64,000 bases of DNA from NCBI RefSeq assembly GCF_003704095.1, contig NW_020844837.1, positions 434,001 through 498,000 on the forward strand. Direction: 5' to 3'. Source of the stretch: Pocillopora damicornis (Eukaryota). Positions 543 to 25,296 of the stretch are shown piece by piece. The notes beneath the pieces were generated by a model, which had not been told where the DNA came from, did no database searches, and saw only the letters and a program-made list of their open reading frames with translations. The position numbers and the translations under genes are program-made. Each line of letters begins with the position of its first letter. The stretch's first letter is position 1.

Positions 543-2096
543 AAATCCGAGTTGCACGAAAATTACCCGAGTTAAATCCGAGTTGCACAAATATTACTCG
601 AGTCATAATAACCTAGCTCCGGCAAATTTTTAGAATGATAAAGAATCGTATCAAACAGCACAAACTTTCCATTGACAAGACACAAGTCGTACTCTCTCTT
701 TCTGATGAGCTGATCACACATGCACACTTGTGTATCTTGATGGCATCAGACACATGTTCTAATGCCACTGGCTCGGCACAGAGCCTTCCAATTCTTCGTG
801 GTCTTCATCTATCTTGTGAGCTCTCGTGTTCCTGTAGCTCTTCATCATCATCATCATCGATCACCGGAAGTTCAATTTTCTGACTCATACTTTTCCGTCT
901 GTTCTTCTTCAACACAGCAGGTGAGTCATTGATACTAGCAGAAAGAAACTTAATTCATTCGGTAATATATTACATAATTCATATATTTTAATAACCAGCG
1001 TGATAGACGTACTTCCCATCAACGCTTCTGCCAGCCCGCGAAAAAACGTCTGCGATCCCAAACGATTTCCGTGAAGTCATAATTTTTTGACCAATCATAT
1101 TTTTACTCTTTTTTTTGTCAAGCTAACAAGCGGGGGGCAAAATGGCGCCCTCTGAAAATACGGCTGTAACAATGAAGGACTGATATTCCAAAATGACCAA
1201 GCAGTCAATACCTGCACCTTTTGGATTTATTCTTACCTCTATGGTAATTATCTAAAATATAGAACTATTATAGTATTTTAAAGTCTCCCTCGGTTACAGG
1301 TCAGCTTTCTTCGTAAAAGAAACGAGGTCCACGTAGAGCGACTTAGTCCCGTTAAGTTTATCCTCGAAAACCGTTTTAGTCTCACAATTACGCCCAAACA
1401 AACTATTGAAATATTCCGGTTGACTATTAACCCAATGAATACAAACGAAACAGTTATGTAAAATTCCCCCAGTATACATTTCAGGAAGCGGAGAACTCTC
1501 CTTAAGAGCTGTAGGAGAACACAGATCAACGAGGACTGGTAATGAATCCTGTGGTGATCTTGGAGCTTGGTAGAGAAAAAAGAGGAATTCAGTTGTTCAG
1601 TTTACATCGTAACTTTGAAAGACAAAATAACAAAATCCTCTCTTACAATCCTCTCTTCAAGGGTAAACCGTGAACTGAAGGGACAGAGCAAAATGCTTTT
1701 TTTAGAGAGGCGTCCCCAAGGAGAGGTTCGACAGCATAAAGACAAAAAGTAAATCAAAAGGAATCGAATAAAACTGGTTAAAAAGAAAAATATTTAAAAA
1801 TCATCCCAGAAGTAATATGTGCGGTTCGCCACATATTTTTTTTTTCTGCCGTTATTCGATCATTCGACAAATATCATTCAAAATGAGAATATTTCACATC
1901 TTCTAATTGCCTTTTGAAAACAGAGGCTAAGCTAAGGCTTAAAAACTTAAATATTTTGATGTTGTTGCAACAATCAGCTGCAAACCACTTCGAGTATAGA
2001 GGATAAGGTTGTTAAGATGCTGTATCAGTGGGAGTGTTATATGGTGATTTGCTTTTATCACCGGAGTTGATGATGTAAACTGGTCATTGTAAAGAG
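543..2096. repeat. Left arm of ~1.55 kb inverted duplication (partner 23364-24947)
   Basis: Colinear reverse-complement match along its length, e.g. 1910-2096 vs 23364-23550 and 605-700 vs 24790-24885. Scattered substitutions and indels. Confidence 0.95.
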
Positions 2097-3596
2097 TTTC
2101 TAAGGTCGACGTTTCGAGACTTAGTCGAAATGTTAGCTTTAGAAAATAATTACGGTGGCCAATTTAAATCAACAACTCGGTTAATAAAGCCAAATCACTT
2201 TGAGTATAAGTCACAAACCTGACTTGGCTGAAATCTATTCGTGTCGTCGCCTTAGGGTATAATGAACATCTCACTGTCAATTTTCGCCTGTATTTTTTGC
2301 CAGGCAGTCATGGTATTCTCACCCGAAGGAAGAGAATGCCGTAGTCCCTGAGGTATGATCATTCTTTCCTGGTTATTTGGGATCTTTCGGGGCCAGGTAC
2401 TGGGACCCCCGATGGGGGATATAGGGTGCCAAGTGAAATTTGTCCTGAAAATCCTGATTCAGCTGCAACTAAATTGTGGGCTCGGAGAACCCAAAAAAAA
2501 GTGCAAAAATAAAACAGTTCAAGTGGTAAAATCCGCTCAAAAGTATTAAGGGAGGGACACATGAGGAGCCCTTTGGGACTTTCAGGCTGAGAAAAATAAC
2601 ACTATGTGTTCTTTAAAATATTTTTCTAGAGGAAAGAATAATCCAACACCAAATATACTTTCGTAGTCTCCTTCGCACCATGTGTTTGGTTTATCGTTAA
2701 GTAATATGCTTTCCCCATCCCACCCACCCCCCCCCCTCCCCCAAAAGCGTTGCGTGCCACCCCAAACCACGGCTGCGAAAGAGATTAACAGCCTCAACGT
2801 ATAAGAAAAAGGGATTTGTAGAAGTCTTTAAATTGAAGAAACTAAGCGGGTAGTTGATGTGACGAGATTAAATAGTGGGATAACTTACTGTGGCCTGGAT
2901 GGCCTCCCTGTCAGGTAATGAATTTTCATCAGCTGTTTCCACATCTTCACGAGAATACATCACATCCTGGTCAGAAATACCGAATATGTCTGTAGAAAGG
3001 CAACACTTCATTAAATTCAATGAAGATAATGGCTGAAAGTAAACTGTTACTCTCCTTAAATGGGGCACTATTTGTTCCCTAATCCATGGGCTAAATGATT
3101 TCTCAATTGTTTTAAAGAAAGAGATCAAGGACATTGAACAAAAAAACAATAAAACGGCAAATGATATTCACAATTCAGAAGAGAAAAATTCAAGGAACGT
3201 AGCTGGCCCGACAATTCACATAAAACGAACTCCATTGCCAAAGAACCCAGATCCCACACTCCAGAGTAGATGTACAGATTTGACATGCCCCAATTCATGC
3301 CCGTTAAAATTGCCACCGTGCGTGTATTGTTATTGAATGAGAGATCGTTATAAAAGGGTTGGTAAACGGTCTAAATTTCATGAAACTTTTTTCAGGTGGT
3401 ATAGATAACAAACATCTATAAGAAATCGTTTCCTTTCAGTTACTCACTCAAGGTGTGTAAAAACTTGATGTGTTTTTCCAGTTCATTGTCAGTTTTTCTG
3501 TGTTTCGAGTGCATCTGATCAAGCTGTAGTTGCGTTTTTGAATGATGAGGATCTTCCAGTGTGAACAAGTCACGTAACTCTTGGTGACAGAAATAC
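666..3596 (-). pseudogene. ERCC6L: Decayed 3' half of ERCC6L/PICH-like SNF2 DNA translocase (copy 1)
   Basis: Manually spliced minus exons: 3596-3448 (YFCHQELRDLFTLEDPHHSKTQLQLDQMHSKHRKTDNELEKHIKFLHTL), 2989-2889 (NIFGISDQDVMYSRED...AIQAT), 2490-2323 (VLRAHNLVAAES...), 1566-1478 (...PVLVDLCSP...), 934-666 (acidic). Resembles the post-helicase region of human PICH as recalled (YFSKQELRELF...GISDHDLMY). Lesions: acceptor GG instead of AG before 2490, in-frame TGA at 2359-2361, acceptor AA before 1566, and frameshifting indels (-14, -4, -1 nt vs copy 2) in the acidic exon. Confidence 0.85.
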
Positions 3597-6500
3597 CTGT
3601 AAGATGAAGTCATTTTTAGATTTAAGGTACTTTTTGCCTATTTCAAGACAGTGTAAGCTCTTAAAATAAATGACAAAAGCTCCTTGAATGGAGAAGTTAT
3701 AATGACAAACGGAATTGAGAAAGTCATGTTCAAGCCGGCACTGACAGCTGGGACCCTGAGGGCTCAGTAAGAGCGAAACAAGTGAAAAACCAATTCAAGC
3801 TATAGATTAAAGTTTAGTTCTTGCTCTGCTTTGTCACCCAGCACAGGCAATGTAATGGTTCTGATCTATGACGATGCAAAATAACNNNNNNNNNNNNNNN
3901 NNNNNNNNNNNNNNNNNNNNNNNNNNNNNNNNNNNNNNNNNNNNNNNNNNNNNNNNNNNNNNNNNNNNNNNNNNNNNNNNNNNNNNNNNNNNNNNNNNNN
4001 NNNNNNNNNNNNNNNNNNNNNNNNNNNNNNNNNNNNNNNNNNNNNNNNNNNNNNNNNNNNNNNNNNNNNNNNNNNNNNNNNNNNNNNNNNNNNNNNNNNN
4101 NNNNNNNNNNNNNNNNNNNNNNNNNNNNNNNNNNNNNNNNNNNNNNNNNNNNNNNNNNNNNNNNNNNNNNNNNNNTTCTAAACATATGAAATAATATGAA
4201 ACTAAAAAAAGATAAAGTTTCTAAGGTAGCCTCACTAGCCATAAAAAGATCCGGCTGCACCCAATTCAAGAATGGTTCCTTTACTTTCTTTTATCGTAAT
4301 GTCGATTTTTGTTATGTGAGTCAGGATCGTGGACGAAGTATTTGAGTGTCCACTATAGCGAGAAAAAAAAATCAAATGTCTCACTGCGGGAGGGGCATGA
4401 AATTGTCCACATTAACAATCAAACAAAACATGACGAAACCAGTGCACGAGTCCCTAACGTGACAAACAATCAAACCGAACACGTACAACACAGTGCGCGA
4501 GACACTAACGTGACAAACAATCCAACAGAACACAGAGAAAACGGTGCACGAGACACTAACGTAACAAAGAATCACACAGAACAGATACAAAACAGTCCGT
4601 GAGACACTAATGTAACAAACAGTCGACAGAACAGATAAAAAACAGTGCACAAAAACCGAACGTAACAAACAGTCAACAGAACACATACAAAACAGTACCC
4701 GAGGCACTAACATGACAAACAATCCAACACAACACATTCAAAACGGTGCGCAAAACACTACCCTAAGTAAAAATCTTACAAAACACATTCAAAACAGTGC
4801 CTAAGGCACTAACGTACCAAACAATCAAAGAGAAAACATACAAAAAAACTGTCGACAGAACATATACAAAACAGTGCCCGAGGCACTAACGTGACAAACA
4901 ATCCAACACAACACATTCAAAACATTGCACAAACAACAAACGTACCAAACAATCAAACAGAACACATTCAAAACGGTGCGCGATGCACTAACTTACCAAA
5001 CAGTCATACAGAACACATTCAAAACGGTGTGCAAAACACTCACGTGACAAAAATCTTACAGAACACATTCAAAACAGTGCGCAAGGCACTAACGTACCAA
5101 ACAGTAAAACAGAACACATAAAAAACACTGCGCAAGGCACTAACGTCATAGAGTCAACAAAAAAATACAAAACAGTGCGGGAGACATTAACGTAACAAAC
5201 TCTCAAGAAAACTCATACCAAACAGTACGCAAGACACTAGAGTCACAAAAAGGCAATAGAACACATAAAAAACAGTGCGCCAAACTCGAACGTAACAAAC
5301 AGTCGATAAAACACGTAGAAAACAGTGCCCGAGGCACTAACATGACAAAACAATCCAACAAAACACATTCAAAACAGTGCGTAAAACACTAACGTCACAA
5401 AAATTAAACAAAACGAATACAAAACATTGCGCAAGGCACTAACGTACCCAACAATCAAACAGAACACACTCAGAACACTGCACGAGCCACTAACATACCA
5501 AAAAATCAAACAGAACAAATACAAAACAGTGCGCAAGGAACTGACGTGACATACAATCAAACAGAACACATGCAAAACAGTGTCCGAGGAACTTACATGA
5601 CAAACAATCCAACAGAACACATTGAAAACAGTGCGCAAAACACTAGTGACAAAAAGGCAACAGAACACATAAAAAACAGTGCACGAAACTCGAACGTAAG
5701 AAACACATAAAAAACAGAACACATAAAAAACAGTGCCCAACGCACTAACGTAAAAAAAATTCTTACAGAACACATTCAAAACAGTGCGCGAGAAACTACC
5801 ATACCAAACAATCATAAGAACACATTCAAAACGGTGCGCAAAACACTAACGTAAGTAGAAGCCTTCCAGAACACATTCAAAACAGTGCGCGAGGCACTAA
5901 CGTACCAAACAATCAAAGAAAAGATATACAAAACAGTGCGCAAGCCCCTAACGTAACAAACTGTCAAGAAAACTTATACCAAACAGTGCGCGAGACACTA
6001 GAGTGACAAAAAATCTTACCAAACCACCATAAAGGACACATACAAAAAAGTGCACAAGGCACTGACGAGACGCAAAACAGTATACGAGGAACTAACGTGA
6101 GAAACAATGAAACAGAACACATTCAAAACAGTGCGCAAAACACTAACATAACAAAAAATCTTACAGAACACATTCCAAACAATGCTCGAGGCACTAACGT
6201 ACCAAATAATCAAAACACATTTAAAACGATGCGCAAAACACTAGCGTGACTAAAAACCTTACGGAACACATTCAAAACAGTGCGCAAGGCATTAACGTAC
6301 CAAACAATCAAACAGAACAGATACAAAACACTGCCCTGGGCACTAACGTCACAAACACTCAACAAAACACATAAAAAACAGTGCGCAAAACACAAACGCA
6401 ACAAAGAATCGTACAGCACACATTCCAAACAGTGCGCGAGTCACTAACGTACCAAACAATCATACAAAACACATACAAAACAGTATGCAAGGAACTGACG

Positions 6501-8409
6501 TGACATACAATCAAACAGAACCCATGCAAAACAGTGTGCCAACAACTAACGTGACAGAGAATCGAACACAACACATTCAAAACAGTGCGCAAAACACTAA
6601 CGCAACAAAAAATAAAAAAGAACACACACAAAAGAATACATAGAATCCAAAAGAACACATGAAAAACAGTGTGCAGGGAACTAAAGTGAGAAACAATCCA
6701 ACAGAACACATTTAAAACAGTGCCCAAAACACTAACGTAACAAAAATTCGTACAGAACACATCCCAAACAGTGCAAGACACACTAACGTATCATACAATC
6801 ATAAAGAACACATTCCAAACGGTGCGCAAAACACTAACGTAAGTATAAATCTTACAGAACACATTTAAAACAGTGCGCAAAGCATTAACGTACAAAACAA
6901 TCAAACAAAACGCATGCAAAACACTGCGCAAGAAACTAACGTCACAAACAGTCAACATAACACATACAAAACACTGCGCGAGACACCAACGTACAACTGT
7001 TATGAAAAATCATACCAAACAGTACGCGAGACACTAGAGTGACAAAAAAGCAACAGAACACATGAAAAATAGTGCACGAAACTCAAACGTAACAACCAGT
7101 CGACAGAACACATCCAAAACAGTGTCCGAGGCACTATCGTGACAAACAATCCCACATAACACATTCAAAACAGTGCAACACACTAACGTAACAAAAAATT
7201 GAACAGAACACATTCAAAACAGTGTCCGAGGCACTACCGTACCCAACAATCATACAGAACACATTCAAAAGAATGCGCAAAACACTTACAAAAGTAAAAA
7301 TCTTAAGGAACACATTCAAAACAGTGCCCAAGACACTAATGTACGAAACAATCAAACAGTAAAAATGCAAAACACTGCGCATGGCACTAACGTCACAAGG
7401 AGTCACCAAAAAAACAAAAAACAGTGCGCGACACACTAACGTAACAAACTGTCAGGAAAACTCATACCAAACAGAGCGAGAGACACAAGAGTGACAAAAA
7501 GGCAACACAACACAAACAGTGCACAAAACTCGAACGTAGCAAACAGTCGACAGAACACATCAATAACAGTGCACAAGGCATAAACGTGACTAAGCATCCA
7601 GCGCAACACATTCAAAACAGTGCGCAAAACGTTAACGTAACAAAATATCGTACAGAACACATTCAAAAGAGTACGCGAAGAGCTGACGTACAAAACAATA
7701 AAAGAACACATTTAAAACTGTGCGCAAAACCCTAACATCAAAAAAAATCTTTCACAACACATTCAAAATAGTGCGCGAGGCACTAACGTATCAAAGTATC
7801 AAACAGAACACAAACAAAACAGCTCGCAAGCAACTGACGTGACATACAATAAAACAGAACACATGCAAAAAAGTTTGCAAGGAGCTTACGTAACAAACAA
7901 TCCAACAAAACATATTCAAAACAGTGCGTAAAACACTAACATCACAATAAATCGTACAGAACACATTCAAAACAGTGCACGAGGAACTGCCGTACTAAAC
8001 AATCATACAGAACACATTCAAAACGGTGCGCAAAACACTAACGTAAGTAAAAGTCTTCCAGAACATATTCAAAGGAGTGCGTAAGGCACTAACGTACCAA
8101 AGAATAATATAGAACACATACAAAACAGTGCGCAAGCAACTGACGTAACACATAAAAAACAGTGTGAGAGAAACTAACGTGAAAAAAAAACCAAACACAT
8201 CATATTCAAAACAGAGCGCAAAACACTAACCTAAATAAAAAACAGAAAACATTCAAAACAGTGCGCGGGGCACTAACGTACCAAACCATTATGCAGAACA
8301 CATTAAAAACGGTGCCCAATACACTAACGTGACTAAAAATCTTACAGAACACATTAAAAAAAGTGTACAAAAAACTAACGTACCAAATGATCAAACAGGA
8401 CACATGCGC

Positions 8410-8463
8410 AACACTGCGCAAAACACTGCGCAAAACACTGCGCAAAACACTGCGCAAAACACT
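8410..8463 (+). repeat. 12-bp sub-repeat (ACACTGCGCAAA)x4 inside the satellite
   Basis: acactgcgcaaa repeated four times, consistent with local slippage. Confidence 0.9.
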
Positions 8464-8837
8464 AACCTAACCACAAATTGTACAAAATACATTTAAAACA
8501 GTGCGCGATGCACTAAAGTACCAAACAATTATACAGAACACATTCAAAACGGCGCGGAAAGCACTAACGTAACAACAAATCTTAAAAAACACAATAAAAA
8601 CAGTGCGCAAGGAACTAAAGTACCAAACACTCAAACACAACACAGATTAAGCATTGCACAAGGAACTAACGTGACAAAGCATCAAACAGAAGACATTCAA
8701 AACAGTGCAGAAAACACTAACATAAAAAAAGATCGTNNNNNNNNNNNNNNNNNNNNNNNNNNNNNNNNNNNNNNNNNNNNNNNNNNNNNNNNNNNNNNNN
8801 NNNNNNNNNNNNNNNNNNNNNNNNNNNNNNNNNNNNG

Positions 8838-9345
8838 GAGCGAAACAAGTGAAAAACTAATTCAAACTATAGATTATAGTTTGGTTCTTGCCCTGCTTTG
8901 TCACCCAGTACAGGCAATGTAATGGTTCTGATCTTAAACGATGCAAAATAATACAGTCAACTCCCGTTATTGCGGAAACCCGCAGAAGGGGGGGGGAGGG
9001 GGGGAAAGAAGATTTAGTGTCCGTAATAGCGGGGGTACGAGAGAAAAATTAATTGATTTGTCTCTAAACATACGAAATAATATGTAACTACAGATAAAGT
9101 TTTTAAGGTGGTCTCACGAACCATAAAAAGATCCGACCGCACCCCGGAAGGTAAAGAAACCATTCTTGAATAGGCTATTCAAGAATGGTTTCTTTACCTT
9201 CCTTTATCGTAATGTCGATTTATATTATGTGAGTCAGGATTGTGGACGAAGAATTTGAGTGTCCACTATAGCGAGAAAAAAACAAATCAAATGTCGCACT
9301 GGGGTAGGGGTATGAAATTGTCCATATTAACAATCAAACAAAACA
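8838..9345 (+). repeat. Diverged direct duplicate of 3771-4430 (unique intronic sequence at the satellite junction)
   Basis: gagcgaaacaagtgaaaaac...gatgcaaaata and ...aagaatggtt...gagtcaggat...tgaaattgtcca occur at both places, each running directly into satellite. Confidence 0.92.
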
Positions 9346-10156
9346 CAATGAAACCATAAATAAGTCACTTACGTGACAAACAATCAAAAAGAACACATAC
9401 GAAACAGTGCGCGAGACACTAACGTAACAAACAGTCAACAGAACGCATACAAAACAGTGCGCGAGACACTAACGTAACAAACAGTCAACAGAACACATAC
9501 AAAACAGTGCGCGAGACACTAACTTGACAAACAGTTAACAGAACACATACAAAACAGTGAGCGAGACATTAACGTGACAAATAATCAAACAGAACACATA
9601 CAAAACAATGCGCAAGACACGAACGAAACAAACAATCAAACAGAGCACACAAAACGGTGCGCGAGGCACTAACGTGACAAACAATGAAACAGAACACATA
9701 CAAAACAGTGCGCGAGGTACTAACGCGACAAACAATCAAACAGAACACATACAAAACAGTGTGCGAGACACTGGCGTGACAAAGAATCAAACAGAACACA
9801 AATAAAACAGTGAAAGAGACACAAACGCCACAAAGACTCAAACAGAACACATTCTAAACAATGCGTTAAGACTAAGGCAACAAACAACAAAACAGAACAC
9901 ATACGAAACAGTACGCGAGACTCTAACGTGAAAAACAGTCAAACAGAACACAGAGAAAAGTCACTAATGTAACATACAATCAAACACAGTGAAAACAGTG
10001 CGCTGTATACTAACGTAACAAACAATCAAACAGAACGCAGAAAAAAACAGAGCTCGAAAAGAGCACGAAACAGTATGTCAACTTATAATCGAGTAGAACA
10101 AACACATGACCAGCTGGAATTCCCCACGAAAGATAAAACGATCTCTTTGGTTTTAC

Positions 10157-10300
10157 CTGAAGGGATTCTTGGACAAGCCTGTGGTCTGCTTCATCAGAGC
10201 ATCTTTGAAGATCTGCTTGCGGTAAATCTTCTCTTCAAGTGTTCCACATGTGATTAGCCGGTAAATAACAACAGTCTTTTTCTGTCCAATTCTGTAAACT
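10157..10300 (-). CDS. ERCC6L: Isolated intact ERCC6L/PICH exon (SF2 helicase motif VI and following segment)
   Basis: AG/GT-bounded 144-nt phase 2-2 exon reads [49 protein letters not shown], closely matching recalled human [53 protein letters not shown]. Phase-compatible with exon 3596-3448. Lies on a small gap-bounded contig (8837-10312). Confidence 0.9.
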
Positions 10301-13300
10301 CTGTTTACAAAANNNNNNNNNNNNNNNNNNNNNNNNNNNNNNNNNNNNNNNNNNNNNNNNNNNNNNNNNNNNNNNNNNNNNNNNNNNNNNNNNNNNNNNN
10401 NNNNNNNNNNNNAAACCTAACACAACATATTCAAAACAGTGCACAAAAAACTAACCTAATAAAAAGTCGTAGAGAACACTTTCAAGGCAGTGCACGAGGC
10501 ATTAACGTACCAAACAGTTATACAGAACACATTTAAAACGATGTACAGTACACTAACATGACTACAAATCTTACAGAACAATTTCAAAACGTGCGCAAGG
10601 ACCTAACGTACCAAAGAATGAAACAGAACACATACAAAAAAGTGTGCAAAACACTAACCTTACCACAAATCGCACAAATCACATTCAAAACAGTGCGCGA
10701 TGCGCTAAACTACCAAAATATCATGCAGAACACATTCAAAACGGTGCGCAAAGCACTAAGATAACTACAAATATTAAAAAACACGATAAAAACAGTGGGA
10801 AAAGAACTAACGTACTAAACACTTAAACACAACCCATAAAAAAACACTGCGCAAGGAACTAACGTGACAAACCATCAAACAAAACACATTGAAAACAGTG
10901 CATAAAACACTAACGTAAAAAAACATCGTACAGAACCCATTCAAAACAGTGCGCGAGGAACTACCGTACAAAACAACCATACACAACACATTCAAAACGG
11001 TGCGCAAAACACTAATGTAAGTAAATGTCTCCCAGAACATATTCAAAGGAGTGCATAAGGCATTAACGTACCAAAGAATAATACATAACACATACAAAAC
11101 AGTGCGCAAGCAACTAACGTGACATACAATCAAACAGAACACATGCAAAAAAGTGTGTGAGGAGCTAACATGAAAGAAAACCAAGCACAACATATTAAAA
11201 ACAGTGCGCAAAACACTAACCTAACAAAAAAATCGTACAGAACACATTCAAAACAGTGCGCGAGGCACTAACGTACGAAACAATTATACAGAACACATTC
11301 AAAACGGTGCGCAATACACTATCGTGACTAAAAATCTTACAGAAAACATTCAAAACAGAGCGCAAGGAGTTAACGTACCAAACAATCAAACAGAACACAT
11401 ACAAAACAGTGCGCGAGGCACTAAACTACAGCCAAATCGTACAAAACAATACAAAAAAACCAAACAACATATTCAAAACAGTGCGCAAAATACTAACGTC
11501 ACGACAAATCATACAAAACACAATCAAAACTGTGCACGAGGCACTAAACTACAAAAGAATCATACAGAACACATTCAAAACTGTGCGAAAAGCACTAATA
11601 TAACTACAAATCTTAAAAAACACAATAAAAACAGTGCGCAAGAAACAAACGTACCAAACACTCAAACACAACACATAAAAAACACTGCCCAAGAAACTAA
11701 CGTGACAAACCATGAAACAGAACACATTCAAAACCGTACATAAAACAGTAACGTAAAAAAATCATACAGAACCCATTCAAAACAGTGCGCGAGGAACTGC
11801 CGTACAAAATAATCATACAGAACATATTCAAAACGGTGCGCAAAACACTAACGTTAGTAAAACTCTTCCAGAACACATTCAAAAGAGTGCGCAAGGCACT
11901 AACGTACCAAAAAATAACACAAAACACACACAAAGAGTGCGAGAGCAAGTGACGTGACATACAATCAAAACAGAACAAATGCCAAACAGAGTGCAAGAAG
12001 GTAACGCGAAAAAAAACCAACACAACATATTCAAAACAGTGTGCAAAACACTAACGTAACAAAAACTCGTACAAATTACTTTCAAAACAGTGCACCAGGC
12101 ACTAACGTACCAAACATTCATACAGAACACATTCAAAACGGTGCGCAATACACTAACCTAACCACAAATCGTACAAAACACATTCAAAATAGTGCGCGAT
12201 GCACTAAACTACCAAATAATCATACAGAACACATTCGAAACGGTGCGCAAAGCACTAACGTAACTACAAATCTTAAAAAGCACAATAAAAAGCACTGCGC
12301 AAGGAACTAACGTGACAAACGATCAAACAGAACACATTCAAAACAGTGCATAAACACTAACCTAAAGAGAGATCGTACAGAATCCATTCAAAACAGTACG
12401 CAAACTAGGAACTACCGTACCTAACAATAATGAGGAACACATTCAAAACGGTGCGCAAAATACTAACGTAAGTAAAAGTCTTCCAGAAGACATTCAAAAG
12501 AGCGCGCAAGGCACTAACATACAAAAGAATAATACAAAACACCTACAAAACAGTGCGCAATCAACTGACGTAACATACAATCAAACAGTACACATGCAAA
12601 ACAGTGTGCAAGAAGCTAACGTGAAAAAAAAACCAAACACAATATATTCAAAACAGTGCGCAAAACACTAACGTAAAGACAACTCGTACAGAACACTTCA
12701 AAAACAGTGCACGGAGCACTAACGTACCAAACAATCATACAGAACACATTCAAAAAGGTGCGCAATACACTAACGTGACTACAAATCTTACAGAACACAT
12801 TCAGAAAGGTGCGCAAGCAGCTGACGTACGAAACAATCAAACAGAACACATACAAAACGGTGCACAAAACACAAACCTAACCACAAATCGTAAAAAACAC
12901 ATTCAAAACAGTGCACGATGCACTAAAGTACCAAACAATCATACAGAACACATTCAAAACGGTGCGCAAAGCTTTAACGTAACTACAAATTTTAAAAACC
13001 ACAATAAAAACAGTACACAAGGAACTAACCTACCAAACACTCAAACACAACACCTAAAAAGCACTGTGCAAGGAACTAACGTGACAAACCATCAAACACA
13101 ACACCTTCAAAACAGAGTATAAAACACTAACATAAAAAAAGATCGTACAGAACCCATTCAACACAGTGCAAAACTAAAAGTCTTCCAGAACACAAGAGTG
13201 CACAAGGCAGTAGCGTACCAAAAAATAATACAGAACACATACAAAACAGTGCGCAAGCAACTGACATAACTTCAAACAGTACACATGCAAAACAGTCTGC

Positions 13301-14678: not shown

Positions 14679-14705
14679 TAACCCTAACCCTAACCCTAAC
14701 CCTAA
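14679..14705 (-). repeat. Interstitial telomeric repeat (TTAGGG)4 within satellite
   Basis: taaccctaaccctaaccctaaccctaa on + strand. Confidence 0.9.
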
Positions 14706-17700
14706 GTCTTCCAGAACACATTCAAAAGAGTGCGCAACGCGCTAACACACCAAAGAATAATACAGAACACATGCAAAACAGTGCACAAGCAACTGACGTG
14801 ACGTGCACTCAAACAGTACACATGCAAGACAGTGCGCAAGAAGCTAAGGTGAAGAAAATCGAACAGAACATATTCAAAACAGTGCGCAAGAAACTAACGT
14901 AACGAGAAATCGTACAGAACACATTAAAAACAGTGCGCGAGGCACTAAAGTACCAAACAATCATACAGAACACATTCAAAACGGTGTGCAATACGCTAAT
15001 GTGACTACAAATCTTACAGAAACAAATTCAAAAACGTGCGCAAGGAACTAACATACCAAACAGTCAAACAGAACACATACAAAACACTGCACAAAACAAT
15101 GACGTGCAAAACAAATTAAAAACAGTGCGCGATATACTAAAGTACCAAACAATCATACAGAACACATTCAAAACGGTGCGCAAAGCACTAACGTAACTAC
15201 AAATATTAAAAAAACACCATAAAAACATGTGTACAAGGAACTACCGTACCAAACAATCATGCACAACACATTCAAAACGGTGCGCAAAACACTAACGTAA
15301 GTAAAAGTCTTCCAGAACAGAGTTAAAAGAGAGTGCAAAGCACTAACGTACCAAAAAATAAGACAAAACACATAAAAAACAGTGCGCAAAACAGTAAAGT
15401 AACCACAAATTGTAGAAAACACATTCAAAACAGTGCACGAGGCACTAAAGTACCAAACACTCAAACAGAACACATAGAAAACAGTGCAAAATTCACTAAC
15501 GTCACCCAAATTGTACAAAACACATTCAAAACAGTGCGCGAGGCCCTAAAGTACCAAACAATCATACGGAACTCATTCAAAACGGTGCGCAAAGCACTGA
15601 CGTAACTATAAATCTTAAAAAACACAATCAAAACAGTGCGCAAGGAATTACCGTACCAAAAACTCAAACACAACACATAAAAAACACTGCGCAAGGAGCT
15701 AACGTGACAACCTATTAAGCAGAACACATTCAAAACAGTGCATAAAACACTAGCGTAAAAAAATTGTACAGAACCCATTCAAAACGGTGCGTGAGGAAAT
15801 ACCGTACTAAACAATCATGCACAACACATTCAAAACGGTGCGCAAAACACTAACGTAAGAAAAACTCTTCAAAACACATTAATAGAGTGTGCAAGGCACT
15901 ACCGTACCAAAGAACAATACAGAACACACAAAACAGTGCAGAAGCAACTGACATGAAATACAATCAAAGAGAACCATGCAAAACAGTGTGAGAGGAGCTA
16001 ACGTGAAAAAAAACCAAACGCAACATATTCAAAACAGTGCGCAAGATACTACCCTAGCAAAAAATCCTTCAGCGCACTTTCAAAACAGTGCGCAGGGCAC
16101 TAACATACCAAATAATCATACAGAACACATTCAAGACAGTGCACAATACACTAACGTGACTACAAATCTTACAGAACACATTCAAAAAAGTGCGCAAGGA
16201 ACTAACCTACCAAATAATCAAACAGAACACACACAAAACAGTGCGCAAAACAGTAACATAACCACAAATCCTACAAAGCACATTCCAAACACTGCGCAAG
16301 GCAATAGGGTACCAAACAATCATACACAAGACATTCAAAATAGTGTGCAAAACACTAACGTAACTACAAATCTTAAAAAACACAATAAAAACATTGCGCA
16401 AGGAACTACCGTAGCAAACCATCATACAGAACACATTTAAAACGATGCGCAAAACACTAACGTGAGAAAAACTCTTCCAGAACAAATTTAAAAGAGTGCG
16501 CAAGGCGCTAACATACCAAAGAATGATAAAAAACACATACAAAACAATGTGCAAGCAAGTGACGTGACATACAATCAAACAGAACACATGAAAAACAGTG
16601 TGAGAGGAGCTAACGTGAAAAAAAAAACAAACACAACATATTCAAAACAGTGGGCAAAACACTACCCTAATAAAAAGTCGTACAGAACACTTTCAAAACA
16701 GTGCGCAAGGCACTACCGAACGAAACAGTTATACAGAACACACTCAAAGCAGTGCGCAATACACTAACGTGACTACAAATCTTACAGAATACATTCAAAA
16801 ACGTGCGCAAGGAGCTAACGTACCAAATAACTAAACAGAATACATACCAAACAGTGCGCAACAATATAACGTGACCACAAATCGTACAGAACACATTCAA
16901 AGCGGTGCGCGAGGCACTAGAGTACCAAACATTCATACAAAACACTAGCAAAACGGTGAGGAAATCACTAACGTAACTACAAATCTTAAAAAGCACAGCA
17001 AAAACAATGCGCAAGGAACTAACGTGACAAACCATGAAACAGAACACATTCAAAACAGTGCATAAAAAACTAACCTAAAAAAGATCATACAGAACTCATT
17101 CAAAACAGTGCGCAAGAAACTACCGTACCAAACAATCACACAAAACACATTCGAAACGGTGCGCAAAGTACTAACGTGAGTAAAAGTCTTCCAGAACACA
17201 TTCAAAAGAGTGCGCAAGGCACTAACGTACCAAAGAATTATAAAAAAACAAACAAAACAGTGCGCAAGCAAGTGACGTGACATACAATCAAATAAAACAC
17301 ATGCAAAACAGTGTGCAAGAAGCTAACGTGTAAAATAACCAAATACGACATATTCAAAACAGTGCGCAAGACACTACCCTAACAAAAAAAATCCTACAGA
17401 ACACTTTCAAAACAGTGCACGAGGAACTTACGTACCAATGCTTCATAGAAAACATATCTAAAACAGTGCACAATACACTAAAGTGACTACAAATCTTTCA
17501 GAACACATTAAAAANNNNNNNNNNNNNNNNNNNNNNNNNNNNNNNNNNNNNNNNNNNNNNNNNNNNNNNNNNNNNNNNNNNNNNNNNNNNNNNNNNNNNN
17601 NNNNNNNNNNNNNNNNNNNNNNNNNNNNNNNNNNNNNNNNNNNNNNNNNNNNNNNNNNNNNNNNNNNNNNNNGTGCGCAAGCAACTACCGTAGCAAACCA

Positions 17701-20700
17701 TCATACAGAACACATTTAAAACGATGTGTAAAACACTAACGTGAGAAAAACTCTTCCAGAACACATTTAAAAGAGTGCGCAGGGCACAAACGTACCAAAG
17801 AATAATACAGAACGCACACAAAACAGTGCGCAAGCAACTGACGTGACATACAATCAAACAGAACACATGCAAAGCAGTGTGAATTGAGCTAACGAAAAAA
17901 AAACCAAACACAACACATTCAAAACAGTGCGCAAAACACTACTCTAACCAAAAAAATTGTACAGAACACTTTAAAAACGGTGTGCAAGGCACTAACGTAC
18001 CAAACAGTTATATAGAACACATTCAAAACAGTGCGCAATACACTAACGTGACTACAAATCTTACAGAACACGTTCAAAAACGTGCGCAAGGAACTAACGT
18101 ATCAAATAATCAAACAGGACACATACCAAACAGTGCGCAACAATATAACGTGACCACAAATCGTACAGAACACATCAAAACAGTGCGCGAGGCACTAAAG
18201 TACCAAACAATCATTCAAAACACATTCAAAACGGTGCAGAAGGCACTAATGTAACTACAAATCTTAAAAACACAGCAAAAACAGTGCGCAAGGAACTAGC
18301 GTACCAAACACTCAACCACAACACATAAAAAACACTGCATAAGGAACTAACGTGACAAACGATCAAACAGAACACATTCAAGACAGTGCTTAAAACACTA
18401 ACCTAAAAAANNNNNNNNNNNNNNNNNNNNNNNNNNNNNNNNNNNNNNNNNNNNNNNNNNNNNNNNNNNNNNNNNNNNNNNNNNNNNNNNNNNNNNNNNN
18501 NNNNNNNNNNGTACAGAACACATTCCAAAGAGTGCGCGAGGCACTAGAGTACCAAATAATCATAGAGAACACATTCAAAACAGTGCGGAAAGCACTAACT
18601 TAAGTACAATTCTTAAAAAACACAACAAAAACAGTGCGCAAGAACCAAGGTACCAAACACTCAAACAGTACACATAAAAAACACTGCGCAGTGAACTAAC
18701 GTGACAAACCATCAAACAGAACACATTCAAAACAGTGCATAAAGCACTAGCGTAAAAAAAATCGTACTGAACCCATTCAAAACAGTGTGCAAGGAACTAC
18801 CATACCAAACCATCATACAGAATGCATTCAAAACGGTGCGCAAAACACTAACCTAGGTAAAACTCTTCCAGAACACATTTAGAAGAGTGCGCAAGGCACC
18901 AACGTACCAAGGAATAATACAGAACACACACAAAACAGTGTGCAAGCAACTGATGTGACATACAAGCAAACAGAACACATCCAAAACAGTGTGAGAGGAG
19001 CTAACGCGAAAAAAACCAAACACAACATATTCAAAACAGTGCGAAAAACACTACCGTAACTAAAAATCGTAAAGAACACTTTCAAAACAGTGCGCGAGGC
19101 ACTAACGTACAAAACAATTATGCGGAACAGATTCAAAACAGTGCGCAATACATTAACGGGACTACAAATCTTACAGAACACGTTCAAAAACGTGCACAAG
19201 GATCTATCGTACCAAATAATCACAAAAACAAAAACAAAAGAGGGGGGGAAAAAGTAATGTGACCACAAATCGTACAGAACACATTCAAAACAGTGCGCAA
19301 GGCACTTAAGTACCAAACAATCAAACAGAACACATACAAAACAGTGCGGAAAGCACTAACGTAACTAGAAATCTTAAAAAACACATTAAAAACAGTGCAC
19401 AATACACTAACGTGACTACAAATCTTACAGAACACATTCAAAAACGTGCGCAAGGAACTAACGTATCAAATAATCAAACAGGACACATACCAAACAGTGC
19501 GCAACAATATAACGTGACCACAAATCGTACAGAACACATTCAAAACAGTGCGCGAGGCACTAAAGTACCAAACAATCACACAGCACACATTGAAAACGGT
19601 GCGCAAATTACTAACGTAAGTAAGTCTTCCAGAACACATTCAAAAGAGGACGCAAGGCACTAACGTACCAAAGAATGATAAAAACACATACAAAACAGTG
19701 CGCAAGCAACTGGCGTGACATACAATCAAACAGAACACATTCAAAACAGTGTGCAAGAAGCTAACGTGAAAAATAACCGAACACAACTTATTCAAAACGG
19801 TGCGCAAAACACTACCCTAACAAAAGGTCGTACAGAACACTTCCAAAACAGTGCGCGAGGCACTAACGCACCAAAGAATAATACAGAACACATTCAAAAC
19901 GGTGCGCAATACACTAACGTGACTACAAATCTTACAGAACACATTCAAAAACGTGAGCAAGGAACTAACGTACCAAATAATAAGAAAGAAAACATACAAA
20001 ACAGTGTGTAAAACAGTAACCACGAATCGTACAAAATACATTCAAAACAGTGNNNNNNNNNNNNNNNNNNNNNNNNNNNNNNNNNNNNNNNNNNNNNNNN
20101 NNNNNNNNNNNNNNNNNNNNNNNNNNNNNNNNNNNNNNNNNNNNNNNNNNNNNNNNNNNNNNNNNNNNNNNNNNNNNNNNNNNNNNNNNNNNNNNNNNNN
20201 NNNNNNNNNNNNNNNNNNNNNNNNNNNNNNNNNNNNNNNNNNNNNNNNNNNNNNNNNNNNNNNNNNNNNNNNNNNNNNNNNNNNNNNNNNNNNNNNNNNN
20301 NNNNNNTGCGCAATACACTAACGTGACAACAAATCTTACAGAACACATTCAAAAACGTGCGCAACGAACTAACGTATCAAACAATCAAACAGAACACATA
20401 GAAAACAGTGCAACACATTCAAAACAGTGCGCAAGACACCAACGTAACAAAAAATCGTACACAACACATTCAGAACATTGCGCAAAGCACTAACCTACCA
20501 AACAATCAAACAGAACACTTTCAAAACGGTGCGCAAAACACTAACGTAGGTAAAAATCTTACCGTACACATTCAAAACAATGCGCGAGGCACTAACGTAC
20601 CAAACAATTATACAGAACACATACAAACAGTGCGCGAGGCACTGAAGTGACATACAATCCAACAGAACACATGAAAAACAGTGCGCGAGGAGCTAACGAG

Positions 20701-23363
20701 ACAAACAATCCGACACAACACATTCAAAACAGTGCAAAAAACACTAACGTAACAAAAAATCGTACACAACACATTCAAAACAGTGCTCGAAACACTAACG
20801 TACCGCACAATCATAGAGAACACTTTCAAAACGGTGCACAAGACACTAACGTAAGTAAAAATCTTACAAAACACACTGAAAACAGTGCAAAAGGCACTAA
20901 GGTACCAAAAAATAAAACAGAACACATACAAAACACTGCGCAAGGCACTAACTTCACAAACAGTCATCAATACAAATACAAAACACTGCGCGAGACCCTA
21001 ATGCAACAAACCGTCAAGTAAACCCATACTAAACAGTGTGCGAGAAATTAGAGTGACAAAAAGGCAACAGAACACAAGAAAATAGTAAGCAACAAACAGT
21101 CAACAGAACACGTGCAAAAGAGTGCCCGACGCATTAACGTGACAAACAATCCAACGGAACACGTTCAAAACAGTGCGCAAAACACTAACGTAACACAAAT
21201 CGTAGAAAACACACTCAAAACAGCGCGCGAGGCACTAACGTACCAAAAAATCAAACAGAACACATCCAAAATAGTGCACAAGGCACCAACGTCACAAACA
21301 GTCAACGAAACACATAAAAATCAGTGCGCGAGACACTTGCGCAAACTTTCAAGAAAACTCATACCAAACACTGCGCGAGACACTAGAGTGACAAAAAGGC
21401 AACAGAACACATAAAAAACACAGCACGAAACTCTAACGTAACAAACAGTCAACAGAACACATACAAAACACTGCCCTATACAATCCTACGCAACACGTTT
21501 AAAACAGTGCACGAAACACTGACGTAACAAAAAAACTTAGAGAACATATTAAAACAGTGGGCGAAGCACTAACGTACCAAGCAATCAAACAGAACACATT
21601 CAAAACGGTGCGCAAAAAACTAACGAAAGTAAAATTCTTACAGAGCACACTTAAAACAGTGCGCAAAGCACTAACGTGCCAAACAATTAAACAGAACACA
21701 TACAAAACACTGAGCAAGGCACTAACGTCACAAGCAGGCAACAGAACACATGCAAAACAGTAGGCAAGACCTTAACGTAACAAACTGCAAAGAAAACTCA
21801 TACCAAACGGTGCGGGAGAAATTAGAGCGACAAAAAGGGAACGGAACACATAAAAAACAGTGCGCGACACTCGAACGTAACAGTCGACAGAACACATTCA
21901 AAACGGTGCACAAAACACTAACTTAACAAAAAACCTTAAAGAACATTGTCAAAACAGTGCGCAAGGCACTAACAAACCAAACAATCGAACAAAACACATA
22001 CAAAACAGTGCACAGGGGACTAACGTGACAAATAGTCAAAAAAAACTCATACAAATCAGTGCGCGAGACACTTGCGTGACAAAAAGTCAACAGAACACAT
22101 AAAAACCAGTGTGCGATACCCGAACGTAACAAACCGTCAACAGAACACATACAAGACATTGTGTGAGGCACTAACGTGATGAACACTCCAACAGAAAACA
22201 TTCAAAACAGTGCGAAAAACACTAACGTGACAAAAAATCATAAAGAACACAGCCAAAACAGTGCGTCAGACACTAACGAACGAAACAATCAAACCGAACA
22301 CATACAAAACAGAGAGAGAGGCACTAACGTGACGAACTGTCAACAAAACACATAAGTGCCCGAGAAACTGACGTCACAAACTGTCAAGAAAACTCATACC
22401 AAACAGTGCACGAGACACTAACGTGAAAAAAGTCAACAGAACACATAAAAAACAGTGCCCGACACCCAAACACAAAAAAACCAGTCAAGAGAGTACATAC
22501 AAAACATTGTGCGAGGCACCAACGTGATAAACAATCAAACAAAACACATTCAAAACAGTGCGCAAAACACTAACGTCAGAATAAATCAAACAGAACACAT
22601 ACAAAACAATGGCACTAAAGTCACAAACAATCCAACAGAATACATTGGAGAGAGTGCGCAAAACACTAACGTAGCAAAAAATCTTACAGAACACATTCAA
22701 ACCAATGCACGAGGCACTAACATACTAAGCAATCAAACACAACACACACAAGACAGTGCGCAAGGCACTAACGTGACAAACAGTCAACAAAAAACATATA
22801 AAACAGTGTGCAAGACACTAACGTGACAAACTGTCAAGAAAACGCATACCAAACAGTGCGCAAGACACTAGCGTAGCAAAAAGTCAACAGAACACATCAA
22901 AAACAGTGTGCGACACCCGAAAGGTAACAAACCGTCAGCAAAACAGATATAAAACACCTCCTGAGGCACTAACGTGATAAAAGATTCGACAGAACACATT
23001 CAAAACAGTGTGCAAAACACTAACGCGAAAAAATCTTGCAGAAAACATTCAAAACAGTGCCGAGGCACTAACGTAACAAACAATCCAACAGAACACATAA
23101 CAAAATTGCGCACGCCACTAACGTGACAAACAGTCAACCAAAAAACATACAAAACAGTGCGCAAGGCACTAACGTAATAAAGAAAGTACACAGAACACAT
23201 ACAAAACAGTGCGCTAGACACTAACGTGACAAACAGTCACAGACAACGCATACCAAACAGTGTNNNNNNNNNNNNNNNNNNNNNNNNNNNNNNNNNNNNN
23301 NNNNNNNNNNNNNNNNNNNNNNNNNNNNNNNNNNNNNNNNNNNNNNNNNNNNNNNNNNNNNNN

Positions 23364-24947
23364 CTCTACAGTGGCCAGTTTACATCATCAACTCCTGTGA
23401 TAAAACCAAATCATCTTATAACACACCCACTGATACAGCGTCTTTACAACCTTATCCTCTATACTCGGAGTGGTTTGCATGTGATTGCTGCGACAACATC
23501 GATCTATTAGAGCTTTTAAGCCTTAAGCTTAGTCTCTGTTTTCAAAAGGCAATCAGAAGTTGTGAAATATTTTCATTTTGAATGATATTTGTCGAATGAT
23601 CGAATGATGGCTTTAAAAAAAAACATGTGGTGAACCGCACACATTGCTTCTAAGATGATTTTTTAATGTTTTTCTTTTTGACCGGTTTTATTCGATTTGT
23701 TTTCATTTACTTTTGTCTCTATGCTGTCGAACCTCTCGTTACGGACACCTCTCTAAAACAGACATTTTGCTCTGTCCCTTCGGTTCACGGTTTACCCTTG
23801 AAGAGAGGCTTGTAAGAGAGAATTTTGTAATTTTGTCTTTCACAGTTGCGATGTAAACTGAATAGCTGACTTCCTCTTTTCTTCCCACCAGGCTTCAAGA
23901 TCAGCACAGAATTCATCACCAGTCCTCATAGATCTTTGTTCTCCTGCAGCTCCTAAGGAGAGTTCTCCCCCTCCTGAAATGTATGCTGGGAGTATTATAC
24001 ACAACAGTTTCGTTTGTATTCATTTTGTTAATAGTCAACTGGAATATTTCAATAGTTTGTTTGGGCGTAATTGTGAAACTTAAACGGTTTTCGGGGATAA
24101 ACTTAACGGGACTACGTCGCTCTACGTGGAACTCGTTTCTTTTAAGAAGAAAGCTGACCTGTAACCGAGGGAAACTTTAAAGTACTTTAATAGTTCTATA
24201 TTTTAGATGATTACCATAGAGGTAAGAATAAATCCAAAAGGTGCAGGTATTGACTGCTTGGTGATTTTGGAATATCAGTCCGTCAGTGTTACAGCCGTAT
24301 TTTCAGAGGGTGCCATTTTGCCCCCCCGCTTGTTAGCTTTACAAAAAAAAGGGCCAAAATATGATTGGTTAAAAAATTATGACTTCACGGAAATCGTTTG
24401 GGATCGCAGGCGTTTTTTCGCAGGCTGGCAGAAGCGTTGATGGGAAGTACGTCTATCACGCTGGTTATTAAAATATATGAATTGTGTGATATATTACCTG
24501 ATGAATTAAGTTTCTTTCTGTTAGTATTAATGACTCACCTGCTGTGTTGAAGAAGAACAGACGGAAAAGTATGAGTCAGAGGATTGAACTTCCGGTGATC
24601 GATGATGATGATGATGATGAGGATGATGAAGAGCTAAAGGAACACGAGAGCTCACAAGATGACAACAACGACATAGATGAAGATCACGAGGAATTGGAAG
24701 GCTCTGTGCCGAGCCAGTGTCCCTCAGGGGAACATGTGTCTGATGCCATCAAGATACACAAGTGTGCATGTGTGATCAGCTCATCAGAGAGAGAGAAGTA
24801 CGACTTGTGTCTCGTCAATGGAAGGTTTGTGCTGTTTGACATGATTCTTTATCATTCTAAAAATTTGCCGGAGTTAGGTTATTTTAACTCGGGTAATATT
24901 CGTGCAACTCGGATTTAACTCGGGTAATGTTCGTGAAACTCGGATTT
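23364..24947. repeat. Right arm of inverted duplication (partner 543-2096)
   Basis: Reverse complement of 543-2096. Begins immediately after a 100-N gap and ends in a 31-bp tandem repeat. Confidence 0.95.
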
Positions 24948-25296
24948 AACTCTGATGATGTTTTTGCAACTCAATTTAACTCGGGTGACGTTCGTGCTTT
25001 TTGTTAGTAGCTTATTGGATTACGATGTGCTATAAGAACGAGAAATGACAGAAAATCACGATGCGAGGACTCAAAGGAGACTGGGCGCGCAATGATAATT
25101 GGGTAGCTCGCCTCAGTCCTCTTGGTATTTTTCTTTCATTTACAGACAACTGGAACTAGAAGGCAAGGTACAGGAGGCTGTTATGCACTATATGGACGCC
25201 TTAGAATTGATGGACAGTGATTATTCTGTACATGTCAAAGTTCTGGAGCTGGCTGAGCAAATGAATTTCCAACCTCCGTTGATTGAAACAGCATAG
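23892..25296 (+). CDS. ERCC6L: 3' end of ERCC6L/PICH-like gene (copy 2) with SIM-like motif, acidic tract and C-terminal TPR-like helix pair; 5' part absent
   Basis: Exons 23892-23980 (ASRSAQNSSPVLIDLCSP...), 24525-24824 (acidic), 25146-25296 splice in frame with canonical sites. End reads YDLCLVNGRQLELEGKVQEAVMHYMDALELMDSDYSVHVKVLELAEQMN, similar to recalled PICH C-terminus YETLVKRGKELKECGKIQEALNCLVKALDIKSADPEVMLLTLSLYKQLN. Possible extra small exons (24207-24221, 24424-24446) unresolved. Confidence 0.75.
24885..24997 (+). repeat. 31-bp intronic minisatellite (aactcgggtaatattcgtgcaactcggattt), ~3.5 units; ~2 inverted units at 543-605
   Basis: Directly visible tandem units at both outer ends of the inverted duplication. 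Confidence 0.85.

What the first reader, a model, noticed from the sequence alone, without database searches (positions are those of the whole stretch)
543..25296. Giant satellite array embedded in a duplicated PICH/ERCC6L locus
Seen: the ~19 kb satellite starts inside the intron separating the helicase motif VI exon from the next PICH exon, and is bracketed by two oppositely oriented 3' halves of the gene, one decayed and one apparently intact. Established: PICH is the SNF2 translocase that coats ultrafine anaphase bridges, mostly at centromeric repeats. Inference: an intronic minisatellite of this gene amplified into a centromere-like array in a duplicated copy that became a pseudogene, i.e. 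a satellite whose birthplace is still visible.
Basis: partly seen in the sequence, partly recalled or inferred. Interest (0 to 1): 0.8.

Follow-up and report, generated by a model that had tools for sequence, protein, structure and literature searches.

The report
Satellite blown up in pseudogene intron
A coral's broken spare copy of the gene ERCC6L (PICH) carries about 30 kb of a 51-base tandem repeat exactly where the working gene has only about 1 kb, but the mirror-image layout in this assembly is a scaffolding error.

Summary
The repeat is real: a 51-bp, A-rich unit fills window 4414-23262. ERCC6L exons lie on both sides. The picture of one array bracketed by two inverted gene halves is an artefact of the short-read Pocillopora damicornis scaffold.

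Gapless contigs from near-identical Pocillopora show two separate loci.
- **Working gene.** It consists of scaffold C1987, the misplaced contig 8837-10312 (motif VI exon), about 1.7 kb missing from the assembly, and window 23364-25296. Its intron after the motif VI exon holds only 0.75-1.4 kb of the repeat. RNA contigs from four studies are all of this type.
- **Partial, unprocessed pseudogene.** It consists of C2740:7706-5808, the array, and window 4413-543. It lacks the motif VI and last exons and has frame-breaking deletions, three of them shared with the sister species. Its array at the same intron position is about 28 kb or more. The array runs on into C2740, not into the right-hand copy.

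The core inference holds: a short intronic array became very large in a decaying duplicate. Three parts do not hold. Nothing supports "centromere-like". The family was not born here, because it sits at nine or more other loci and in a second ERCC6L intron. Whether the pseudogene expanded or the parent contracted is not fully settled.

An earlier scan note (s1-784426) made the same short-versus-long observation.

The parts
543..3885 (-). 3' part of the ERCC6L pseudogene (left copy). RNA-defined exon equivalents lie at 3450-3601, 2887-2989, 2218-2488, 1478-1565 and about 656-934. Frame-breaking deletions lie near 2401, 810, 758-760 and 692, with a premature stop at 805-807.
   Evidence: tblastn with ERCC6L proteins. 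RNA joints, and letters that transcripts put in relative to this copy. Alignment with the sister species and with the working gene. ORFs.
3886..4175 (.). Assembly gap inside the pseudogene intron. Its true size is about 119-122 bp and its flanks are continuous.
   Evidence: Sister long-read contig L025 and TARA scaffold L059 bridge it at 98-99.6% identity.
4176..4413 (-). Unique intron flank next to the array. It is a paralog of the working gene's flank (L042:6007-6158).
   Evidence: about 90% to the working-gene type, 99.6% to TARA left-type scaffolds.
4414..8736 (.). Proximal part of the pseudogene's 51-bp array. Its consensus monomer is 94% identical to that of the working gene's intron array.
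8837..10312 (-). Misplaced, inverted contig from the working ERCC6L gene. It holds the motif VI exon (10156-10308), the short intronic array (about 9330-10074) and the intron flank (8838-9329).
   Evidence: It is 98.3% identical to long-read contig L042:4327-4564, and 95-97% to right-type scaffold L028 against 83-92% to the left type. The exon is 72.5% identical to ERCC6L.
10413..23263 (.). Four more contigs of the pseudogene array: 10413-17514, 17673-18410, 18511-20052 and 20307-23263. Their order and orientation match the gapless TARA scaffold.
   Evidence: 98-99% identity for the last three.
23264..23363 (.). 100-N scaffolder join that is false. It joins the pseudogene array to the working gene.
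   Evidence: The satellite's strand is wrong for the right copy.
23364..25296 (+). 3' end of the working ERCC6L gene (right copy). It holds exon 23893-23980, the acidic exon from 24525 to about 24834, and the last exon from about 25100 to the stop at 25294-25296. Three upstream exons are missing from the assembly.
   Evidence: It is 99.2% identical to long-read contig L042:8183-13537. RNA runs hold 40-59% of its words. Transcripts carry right-type letters. The last exon is single-copy in the genome.
24883..24997 (+). 31-bp tandem repeat (3.7 copies here, 2 copies at 543-603) where homology between the two copies ends.
25343..25940 (+). Segment downstream of the working gene. Its only paralog (86%) lies upstream of the pseudogene's exons, on C2740:10636-11219.

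Best explanation
Pocillopora damicornis has two ERCC6L loci, and the short-read plus proximity-ligation scaffold has fused them at a shared repeat.

**Locus 1: the working gene.** Its intron after the motif VI exon holds a length-variable 51-bp minisatellite of 0.75-1.4 kb.

**Locus 2: an old, partial, unprocessed duplicate.** It runs from the intron before the exon for aa 520-567 to just short of the last exon.
- It has lost the motif VI exon.
- It carries frame-breaking deletions.
- No transcript of its type was seen.
- In the paralogous intron the same minisatellite is about 28-31 kb long. Parent-like monomers sit at its edges and a derived variant sits inside.

**Inferred mechanism.** Once the duplicate was no longer needed as a spliced gene, replication slippage and unequal exchange could lengthen the array unchecked, and the array swallowed the neighbouring exon.

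**Inferred cause of the misjoin.** The scaffolder linked array-bearing contigs of the two loci. That produced the apparent inverted bracket, dropped the motif VI contig into the array, and left C1987 and C2740 as separate scaffolds.
For: **Structure of the working gene**
- The gapless long-read contig ctg66862 is 98-99% identical to this genome. In order it holds C1987:3612-1, a mini exon, the motif VI exon, a 1.4-kb array, exons for aa 642-692 and 691-729, then window 23364-28717.
- A second contig of the same sample has a 1.0-kb array.
- TARA scaffolds agree.
- A more distant coral has the same order and the same downstream flank.

**Structure of the pseudogene**
- The sister long-read contig has at least 14.4 kb of array followed by the left copy with the same left flank.
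- TARA scaffold_178 is gapless from the left copy through 28.3 kb of array to a tail that equals C2740:2979-3267 at about 99%.
- Three samples agree at 99.8% over 12 kb.
- C2740:6263-7706 is about 89% identical to C1987:1-1554. C2740:5808-6029 is 88.7% identical to the intron just before the motif VI exon, and the array starts there.

**Decay of the pseudogene**
- Deletions of 12, 14 and 4 bp are shared with the sister species, and each species also has private frameshifts.
- There is a premature stop.

**Expression**
- RNA contigs from 4 studies laid on the left copy are all 85-95% alike and carry the right-copy letters and insertions.

**Monomers**

**Assembly method**
- PMC6208414.
Against: - Direction of change is not settled. 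The array in the more distant coral is at least 2.1 kb but was cut by the fetch limit, so the parent array may have shrunk rather than the pseudogene array grown.
- The far end of the array was reached only in short-read metagenome scaffolds and in this assembly, not in a long-read contig.
- Missing left-type transcripts in assembled RNA contigs is weak evidence of silence, because contigs drop rare variants.
- The distance and orientation between the two loci on the chromosome are unknown, so a much larger-scale inverted arrangement is not excluded.
Confidence: 0.85

Rival explanations
1. One reading: one giant array lies between two head-to-head 3' halves of ERCC6L, a palindromic duplication centred on the satellite.
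For: The scaffold as assembled. Both copies are on scaffold C1472.
Against: - Gapless contigs place only 4.5 kb, with a 1.0-1.4 kb array, between C1987 and 23364.
- The array continues into C2740.
- In every gapless copy the satellite is T-rich in the gene's sense, but next to the right copy in the window it is A-rich.
- The link rests on 100-N scaffolder joins only.
Confidence: 0.03
2. The left and right copies are two diverged haplotypes (alleles) of a single locus, assembled side by side.
For: The published genome paper reports high heterozygosity. Two working-gene haplotypes in one sample differ by 3.3%.
Against: - Left and right differ by about 10%.
- They have different outer flanks.
- The left type, with the same flank and shared deletions, is present in the sister species at 96%.
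- One TARA sample (ERZ28655956) yields both a working-gene scaffold and a scaffold of the large array.
Confidence: 0.03
3. The direction of change is reversed: the ancestral intron already held a very long array, the duplicate kept it, and the working gene later trimmed its array to about 1 kb.
For: The array in the more distant coral is at least 2.1 kb with its upper bound unknown. The giant array is more heterogeneous (62-73% match) than the short one (88-90%), which could mean it is older.
Against: - Loss of the motif VI exon and about 360 bp at the array's edge is specific to the pseudogene.
- The interior of the giant array is built from a derived monomer variant absent from the parent array and from the more distant coral.
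- The working-gene arrays are all 0.75-1.4 kb.
Confidence: 0.1
4. The array is, or is becoming, a centromeric or other chromatin-organising satellite.
Against: - It is a single locus with poorly homogenised monomers.
- Other arrays of the family are 0.3-3 kb at scattered sites.
- No chromatin data are available.
Confidence: 0.02

Closest known systems
Seed-and-amplify ('library') model of satellite DNA, in which short tandem arrays at scattered sites occasionally amplify into long arrays (for example retrotransposon-derived repeats in plants; PMC7004042, title and abstract only)
   Same: One repeat family occurs as many short arrays (0.3-3 kb) and one much longer array. The array's edges keep the ancestral monomer type and its interior carries a derived one.
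   Different: The seed is not inside a transposon, because flanks of the different arrays are unrelated. Parent and amplified arrays can be paired directly through paralogous introns of a gene and its pseudogene.
Unprocessed (duplicated) pseudogenes
   Same: It keeps introns, covers only part of the gene, has frameshifts and a premature stop, decays independently in two species, and shows no transcripts of its type.
   Different: Its pieces are circularly permuted relative to the parent: the parent's downstream segment lies upstream of exons for aa 520-605. One intron has grown to about 30 kb.
ERCC6L / PICH, the SNF2-family translocase of ultrafine anaphase bridges (function known from human cells; my own knowledge)
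   Same: The working coral gene has SNF2 and helicase exons and the conserved stretch after motif VI. Its best matches are proteins that sources name ERCC-6-like.
   Different: No evidence links the protein's function to the repeat in its intron. The association looks coincidental.
Repeat-induced scaffold misjoins in short-read plus proximity-ligation assemblies
   Same: 100-N joins connect contigs that end in the same repeat, a small contig is inverted, and neighbouring scaffolds are left out.
   Different: Nothing unusual. The published gene model pdam_00005360 is a chimera that follows from the misjoin.

Membership tests
ERCC6L / PICH | SNF2-related ATPase lobe | tested here: met
   Exons of the working locus hit PF00176 at 3e-12 and 1e-10. 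The exon chain for aa 113-605 lies on C1987 and L048.
ERCC6L / PICH | Helicase C lobe with motif VI | tested here: met
   Window 10156-10308 is 72.5% identical to the motif VI exon of ERCC6L proteins. Single exons reach only sub-threshold PF00271 scores.
ERCC6L / PICH | Conserved stretch directly after the helicase domain (YRYF..QELR.LFTL..TQLQL) | tested here: met
   The exon at 3449-3601 finds 180 proteins. The full-length ones include proteins that sources name ERCC-6-like.
ERCC6L / PICH | Terminal TPR-like repeats | tested here: inconclusive
   The last exon has no Pfam hit. The N-terminal exon on C1987:5042-5173 aligns to the N-terminal region of P0012.
ERCC6L / PICH | Binding to ultrafine anaphase bridges | not testable with these tools
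   Needs cell biology.
Unprocessed pseudogene | Retains introns and paralogous non-coding flanks | tested here: met
   About 90% identity across exons and introns alike.
Unprocessed pseudogene | Disabling lesions | tested here: met
   Frameshifting deletions, a premature stop, and loss of the motif VI exon, the last exon and all exons before aa 520.
Unprocessed pseudogene | No functional transcript | tested here: inconclusive
   No left-type contig appeared in 4 RNA runs. Assembled contigs cannot prove absence.
Centromeric satellite | Long, homogenised arrays bound by CENP-A | tested here: not met
   Length is met at one locus only. Monomer match is 62-73%. Other arrays are 3 kb or shorter. 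Chromatin binding could not be tested.
Minisatellite (VNTR) | Unit of 10-100 bp with length variation between individuals | tested here: met
   The unit is 51 bp. The working-gene array is 0.75, 1.0, 1.4 and at least 1.15 kb in four assemblies. The pseudogene array shows kb-scale differences between individuals.

The most novel reading that the evidence does not exclude
The pseudogene's pieces are circularly permuted relative to the parent gene: downstream segment, then exons for aa 520-605, then the array, then the 3' exons, with the last exon lost at the break. This could mean the duplicate arose by re-insertion of an extrachromosomal circle excised from the ERCC6L locus. The same route could scatter the 51-bp repeat to its many unrelated sites, with runaway growth once splicing no longer constrained the intron.
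Probability: 0.1. Interest if true: 0.55.

Novelty: new member of a known kind. Interest (0 to 1): 0.33.

Why it matters
**For users of the P. damicornis reference**
- Scaffold C1472 is chimeric near 437.9-457.4 kb.
- The working ERCC6L gene is split over three pieces and lacks four exons in the assembly.
- The published model pdam_00005360 is a chimera of repeat, working-gene and pseudogene exons.

**For repeat biology**
- This is a clean natural pair: the same minisatellite at the same intron position is about 1 kb in a spliced gene and about 30 kb in its decaying duplicate. Both are conserved across two species.
- The pair lets array growth be dated, and it allows a test of whether selection for splicing limits intronic repeat length.
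- It does not bear on centromeres.

Tried and rejected
- **Word search with a snail ERCC6L protein.** It confirmed the family name but listed no coral among the best 120 hits.
- **Looking for the sister species' working copy through a neighbouring receptor gene.** This did not reach the sister contig. It did lead to the long-read contig ctg66862.
- **Transposon-carrier idea for the repeat.** Rejected, because flanks of eight arrays share nothing.
- **Simple tandem duplication.** Rejected, because the working gene is followed directly by its usual downstream genes in long-read contigs.
- **The 2.9 kb between the two paralogous pieces on C2740.** It is unique in the genome and unexplained.
- **One look-up failed.** The called ORF contains stops in the standard code.
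- **Pfam on single exons for TPR.** It gave nothing.
- **Literature.** No paper links ERCC6L, a pseudogene and a satellite.
- **Spliced model.** It was searched exon by exon by reference.
Full report
**What is in the window**

Tandem Repeats Finder finds a 51-bp unit from 4414 to 23262, with higher-order periods of 102-398 bp and only 62-68% matches between units. The + strand is A-rich across the whole stretch (AT skew about +0.5), so there is one orientation throughout.

The stretch is cut by N runs at 8737, 10313, 17515, 18411, 20053 and 23264. A further gap lies at 3886-4175 just outside it.

A 1.55-kb inverted repeat flanks the stretch: 543-2094 against 24947-23364, 89.6% identical. The right arm stops exactly at a gap. 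Homology ends at a 31-bp tandem repeat present in both arms.

**The genome**

The assembly has 234 Mb in 4393 scaffolds, and the window is C1472:434001-498000. An exact protein look-up ties C1472 (680,225 bp) to Pocillopora damicornis through protein RMX47960.1. The published assembly used Illumina shotgun plus Chicago libraries scaffolded with HiRise (PMC6208414). I therefore take the 100-N runs to be scaffolder joins; this is my inference.

**ERCC6L exons**

The ORF at 3443-3637(-) finds 180 proteins. The full-length ones are proteins that sources name ERCC-6-like. Two of them (P0022, P0012) were used as probes, exon by exon.
- The window holds the motif VI exon at 10156-10308(-), then exons at 3449-3601(-) and 2880-2996(-).
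- Exons for aa 7-605 lie on another scaffold, C1987:5173-116(-), which ends just after them.
- A third scaffold, C2740, starts with 5.8 kb of the same repeat. It then carries an 89% paralog of C1987:1-1554, covering exons for aa 520-605.
- The last exon (25099-25293) and the exon at 3449-3601 are each single-copy in the assembly.

**Gapless relatives resolve the structure**

*Working gene*
- L042, L048 and L040 come from ctg66862, a 1.01-Mb long-read contig that is 98-99% identical to this genome.
- In order it holds C1987:3612-1, a mini exon, the motif VI exon (equal to window 10312-10075 at 98.3%), and only 1.4 kb of repeat.
- Next come exons for aa 642-692 and 691-729, then window 23364-28717 at 99.2%. 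It continues collinear with the window to 44 kb.
- A second contig of the same sample has 1.0 kb of repeat.
- TARA scaffolds agree.
- A more distant coral contig (L027, 78-88% identity) has the same order and the same downstream flank, so the right copy sits at the ancestral place.

*The misplaced contig*
- Contig 8837-10312 is 95-98% identical to this working-gene type and only 83-92% to the left type. It is therefore misplaced and inverted.

*Pseudogene*
- The sister species' long-read contig (L025, deposited as P. meandrina) has at least 14.4 kb of repeat. It is followed by the ortholog of the left copy (94-98.7%) and by the same left flank.
- TARA scaffold_178 is gapless from the left copy through 28.3 kb of repeat. 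It ends in a non-repeat tail that equals C2740:2979-3267 at about 99%.
- Scaffolds from three samples agree at 99.8% over 12 kb.
- The window's array contigs map onto that scaffold in the same order and orientation, and C2740 follows 23263.
- On C2740 the repeat begins at 5808. That point is about 100 bp before where the motif VI exon should be, so this copy has lost the exon and about 360 bp around it.

**The gaps**

| Gap | Finding |
|---|---|
| 3886-4175 | Real, about 120 bp, flanks continuous |
| 8737-8836 and 10313-10412 | Surround the foreign contig 8837-10312 |
| 17515-17672, 18411-18510, 20053-20306 | Lie inside the array and hide about 2.1, 1.9 and 0.55 kb |
| 23264-23363 | False join |

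**Which copy works**

RNA runs from several studies hold 40-59% of the words of 23364-25296. Contigs of four RNA runs were laid on the left copy at 85% likeness or more.
- None is 99% alike on the gene part.
- All carry right-copy letters. Relative to the left copy they put in 1, 3+1, 14 and 1 bases at 692, 758-760, 810 and 2401.
- Their joints define exons 3450-3599, 2887-2989, 2218-2488, 1478-1565 and one ending at 934.
- They run on into the motif VI exon.

The left copy shares deletions of 12, 14 and 4 bp with its sister-species ortholog, and each species has further private frameshifts. It has a premature stop at 805-807. This is what neutral decay of a pseudogene older than the species split would look like.

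Left and right copies differ by about 10%, and the two left orthologs by 3.9%.

**The repeat family**

Arrays of the family lie on at least nine other scaffolds. They are 0.3-3 kb long and have unrelated flanks. A second array of about 0.9 kb, in the opposite orientation, sits in another intron of the working gene.

Consensus monomers compare as follows:
- The working-gene array and the edges of the giant array are 94-98% alike and share the word CACATAC.
- The interior of the giant array uses a derived variant (84-88%).
- Other loci and the distant coral have different words at that position (80-92%).
- Units match at 88-90% within the short array, against 62-73% within the giant one.

**Reading**

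Shown:
- There are two loci.
- The arrays sit at paralogous intron positions and differ 20- to 40-fold in length.
- The long-array copy is decayed.
- The scaffold is misjoined.

Inferred:
- The array grew after the duplicate lost its function. The distant coral's array length is unknown above 2.1 kb, so a shrinking parent array is not excluded.

Unexplained:
- In the pseudogene the parent's downstream segment (25343-25940) lies upstream of exons for aa 520-605, separated from them by 2.9 kb of unique DNA. This is a circular permutation that a simple tandem duplication does not give.
- The chromosomal distance between the two loci is unknown.

**Known or new**

I found no paper describing this. 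It is an instance of short-array-to-long-array amplification in an unprocessed pseudogene, together with an ordinary repeat-driven misassembly. Nothing supports a centromere role. The earlier scan note s1-784426 had already seen the short and long states of the intron in this window.

Noticed in passing
L048:8750-9629 (equal to the gap C1987:4039-4138): A second array of about 0.9 kb of the same 51-bp family lies in another intron of the working ERCC6L gene, between the exons for aa 253-297 and 297-329. It is in the opposite orientation, and its monomer type is closer to that of other loci.
   Followed up: partly
window 543-10312 (protein RMX47960.1, pdam_00005360): The published 288-aa gene model is a chimera. 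It combines peptide read from the repeat, the working gene's motif VI exon and pseudogene exons, and it ends at the pseudogene's premature stop.
   Followed up: yes
window 23364-23440 and 2020-2094: The inner 75 bp of both arms match 35 or more other places in the genome at 77-90%. This is a short dispersed repeat inside the intron.
   Followed up: no
L009:7707-10635 (C2740): 2.9 kb of DNA unique in the genome lies between the pseudogene's exons and the paralog of the parent's downstream segment. Its origin is unknown.
   Followed up: partly
L073:16882-16941, L075:12064-12377, C2740:3040-3267: A non-repeat insertion of at least 314 bp interrupts the pseudogene array about 2.5 kb from its far end. 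It is conserved between this assembly and TARA scaffolds.
   Followed up: no
window 28718-28817: This 100-N gap corresponds to about 1.07 kb in the long-read contig (L040:3820-4892). The flanks are collinear.
   Followed up: yes
I used them only as landmarks.
   Followed up: no
L060:166-1056 and similar calls in TARA scaffolds: Metagenome gene callers report ORFs of 100-300 aa inside the repeat, some with in-frame stops in the standard code. These are spurious proteins that populate public protein collections.
   Followed up: no
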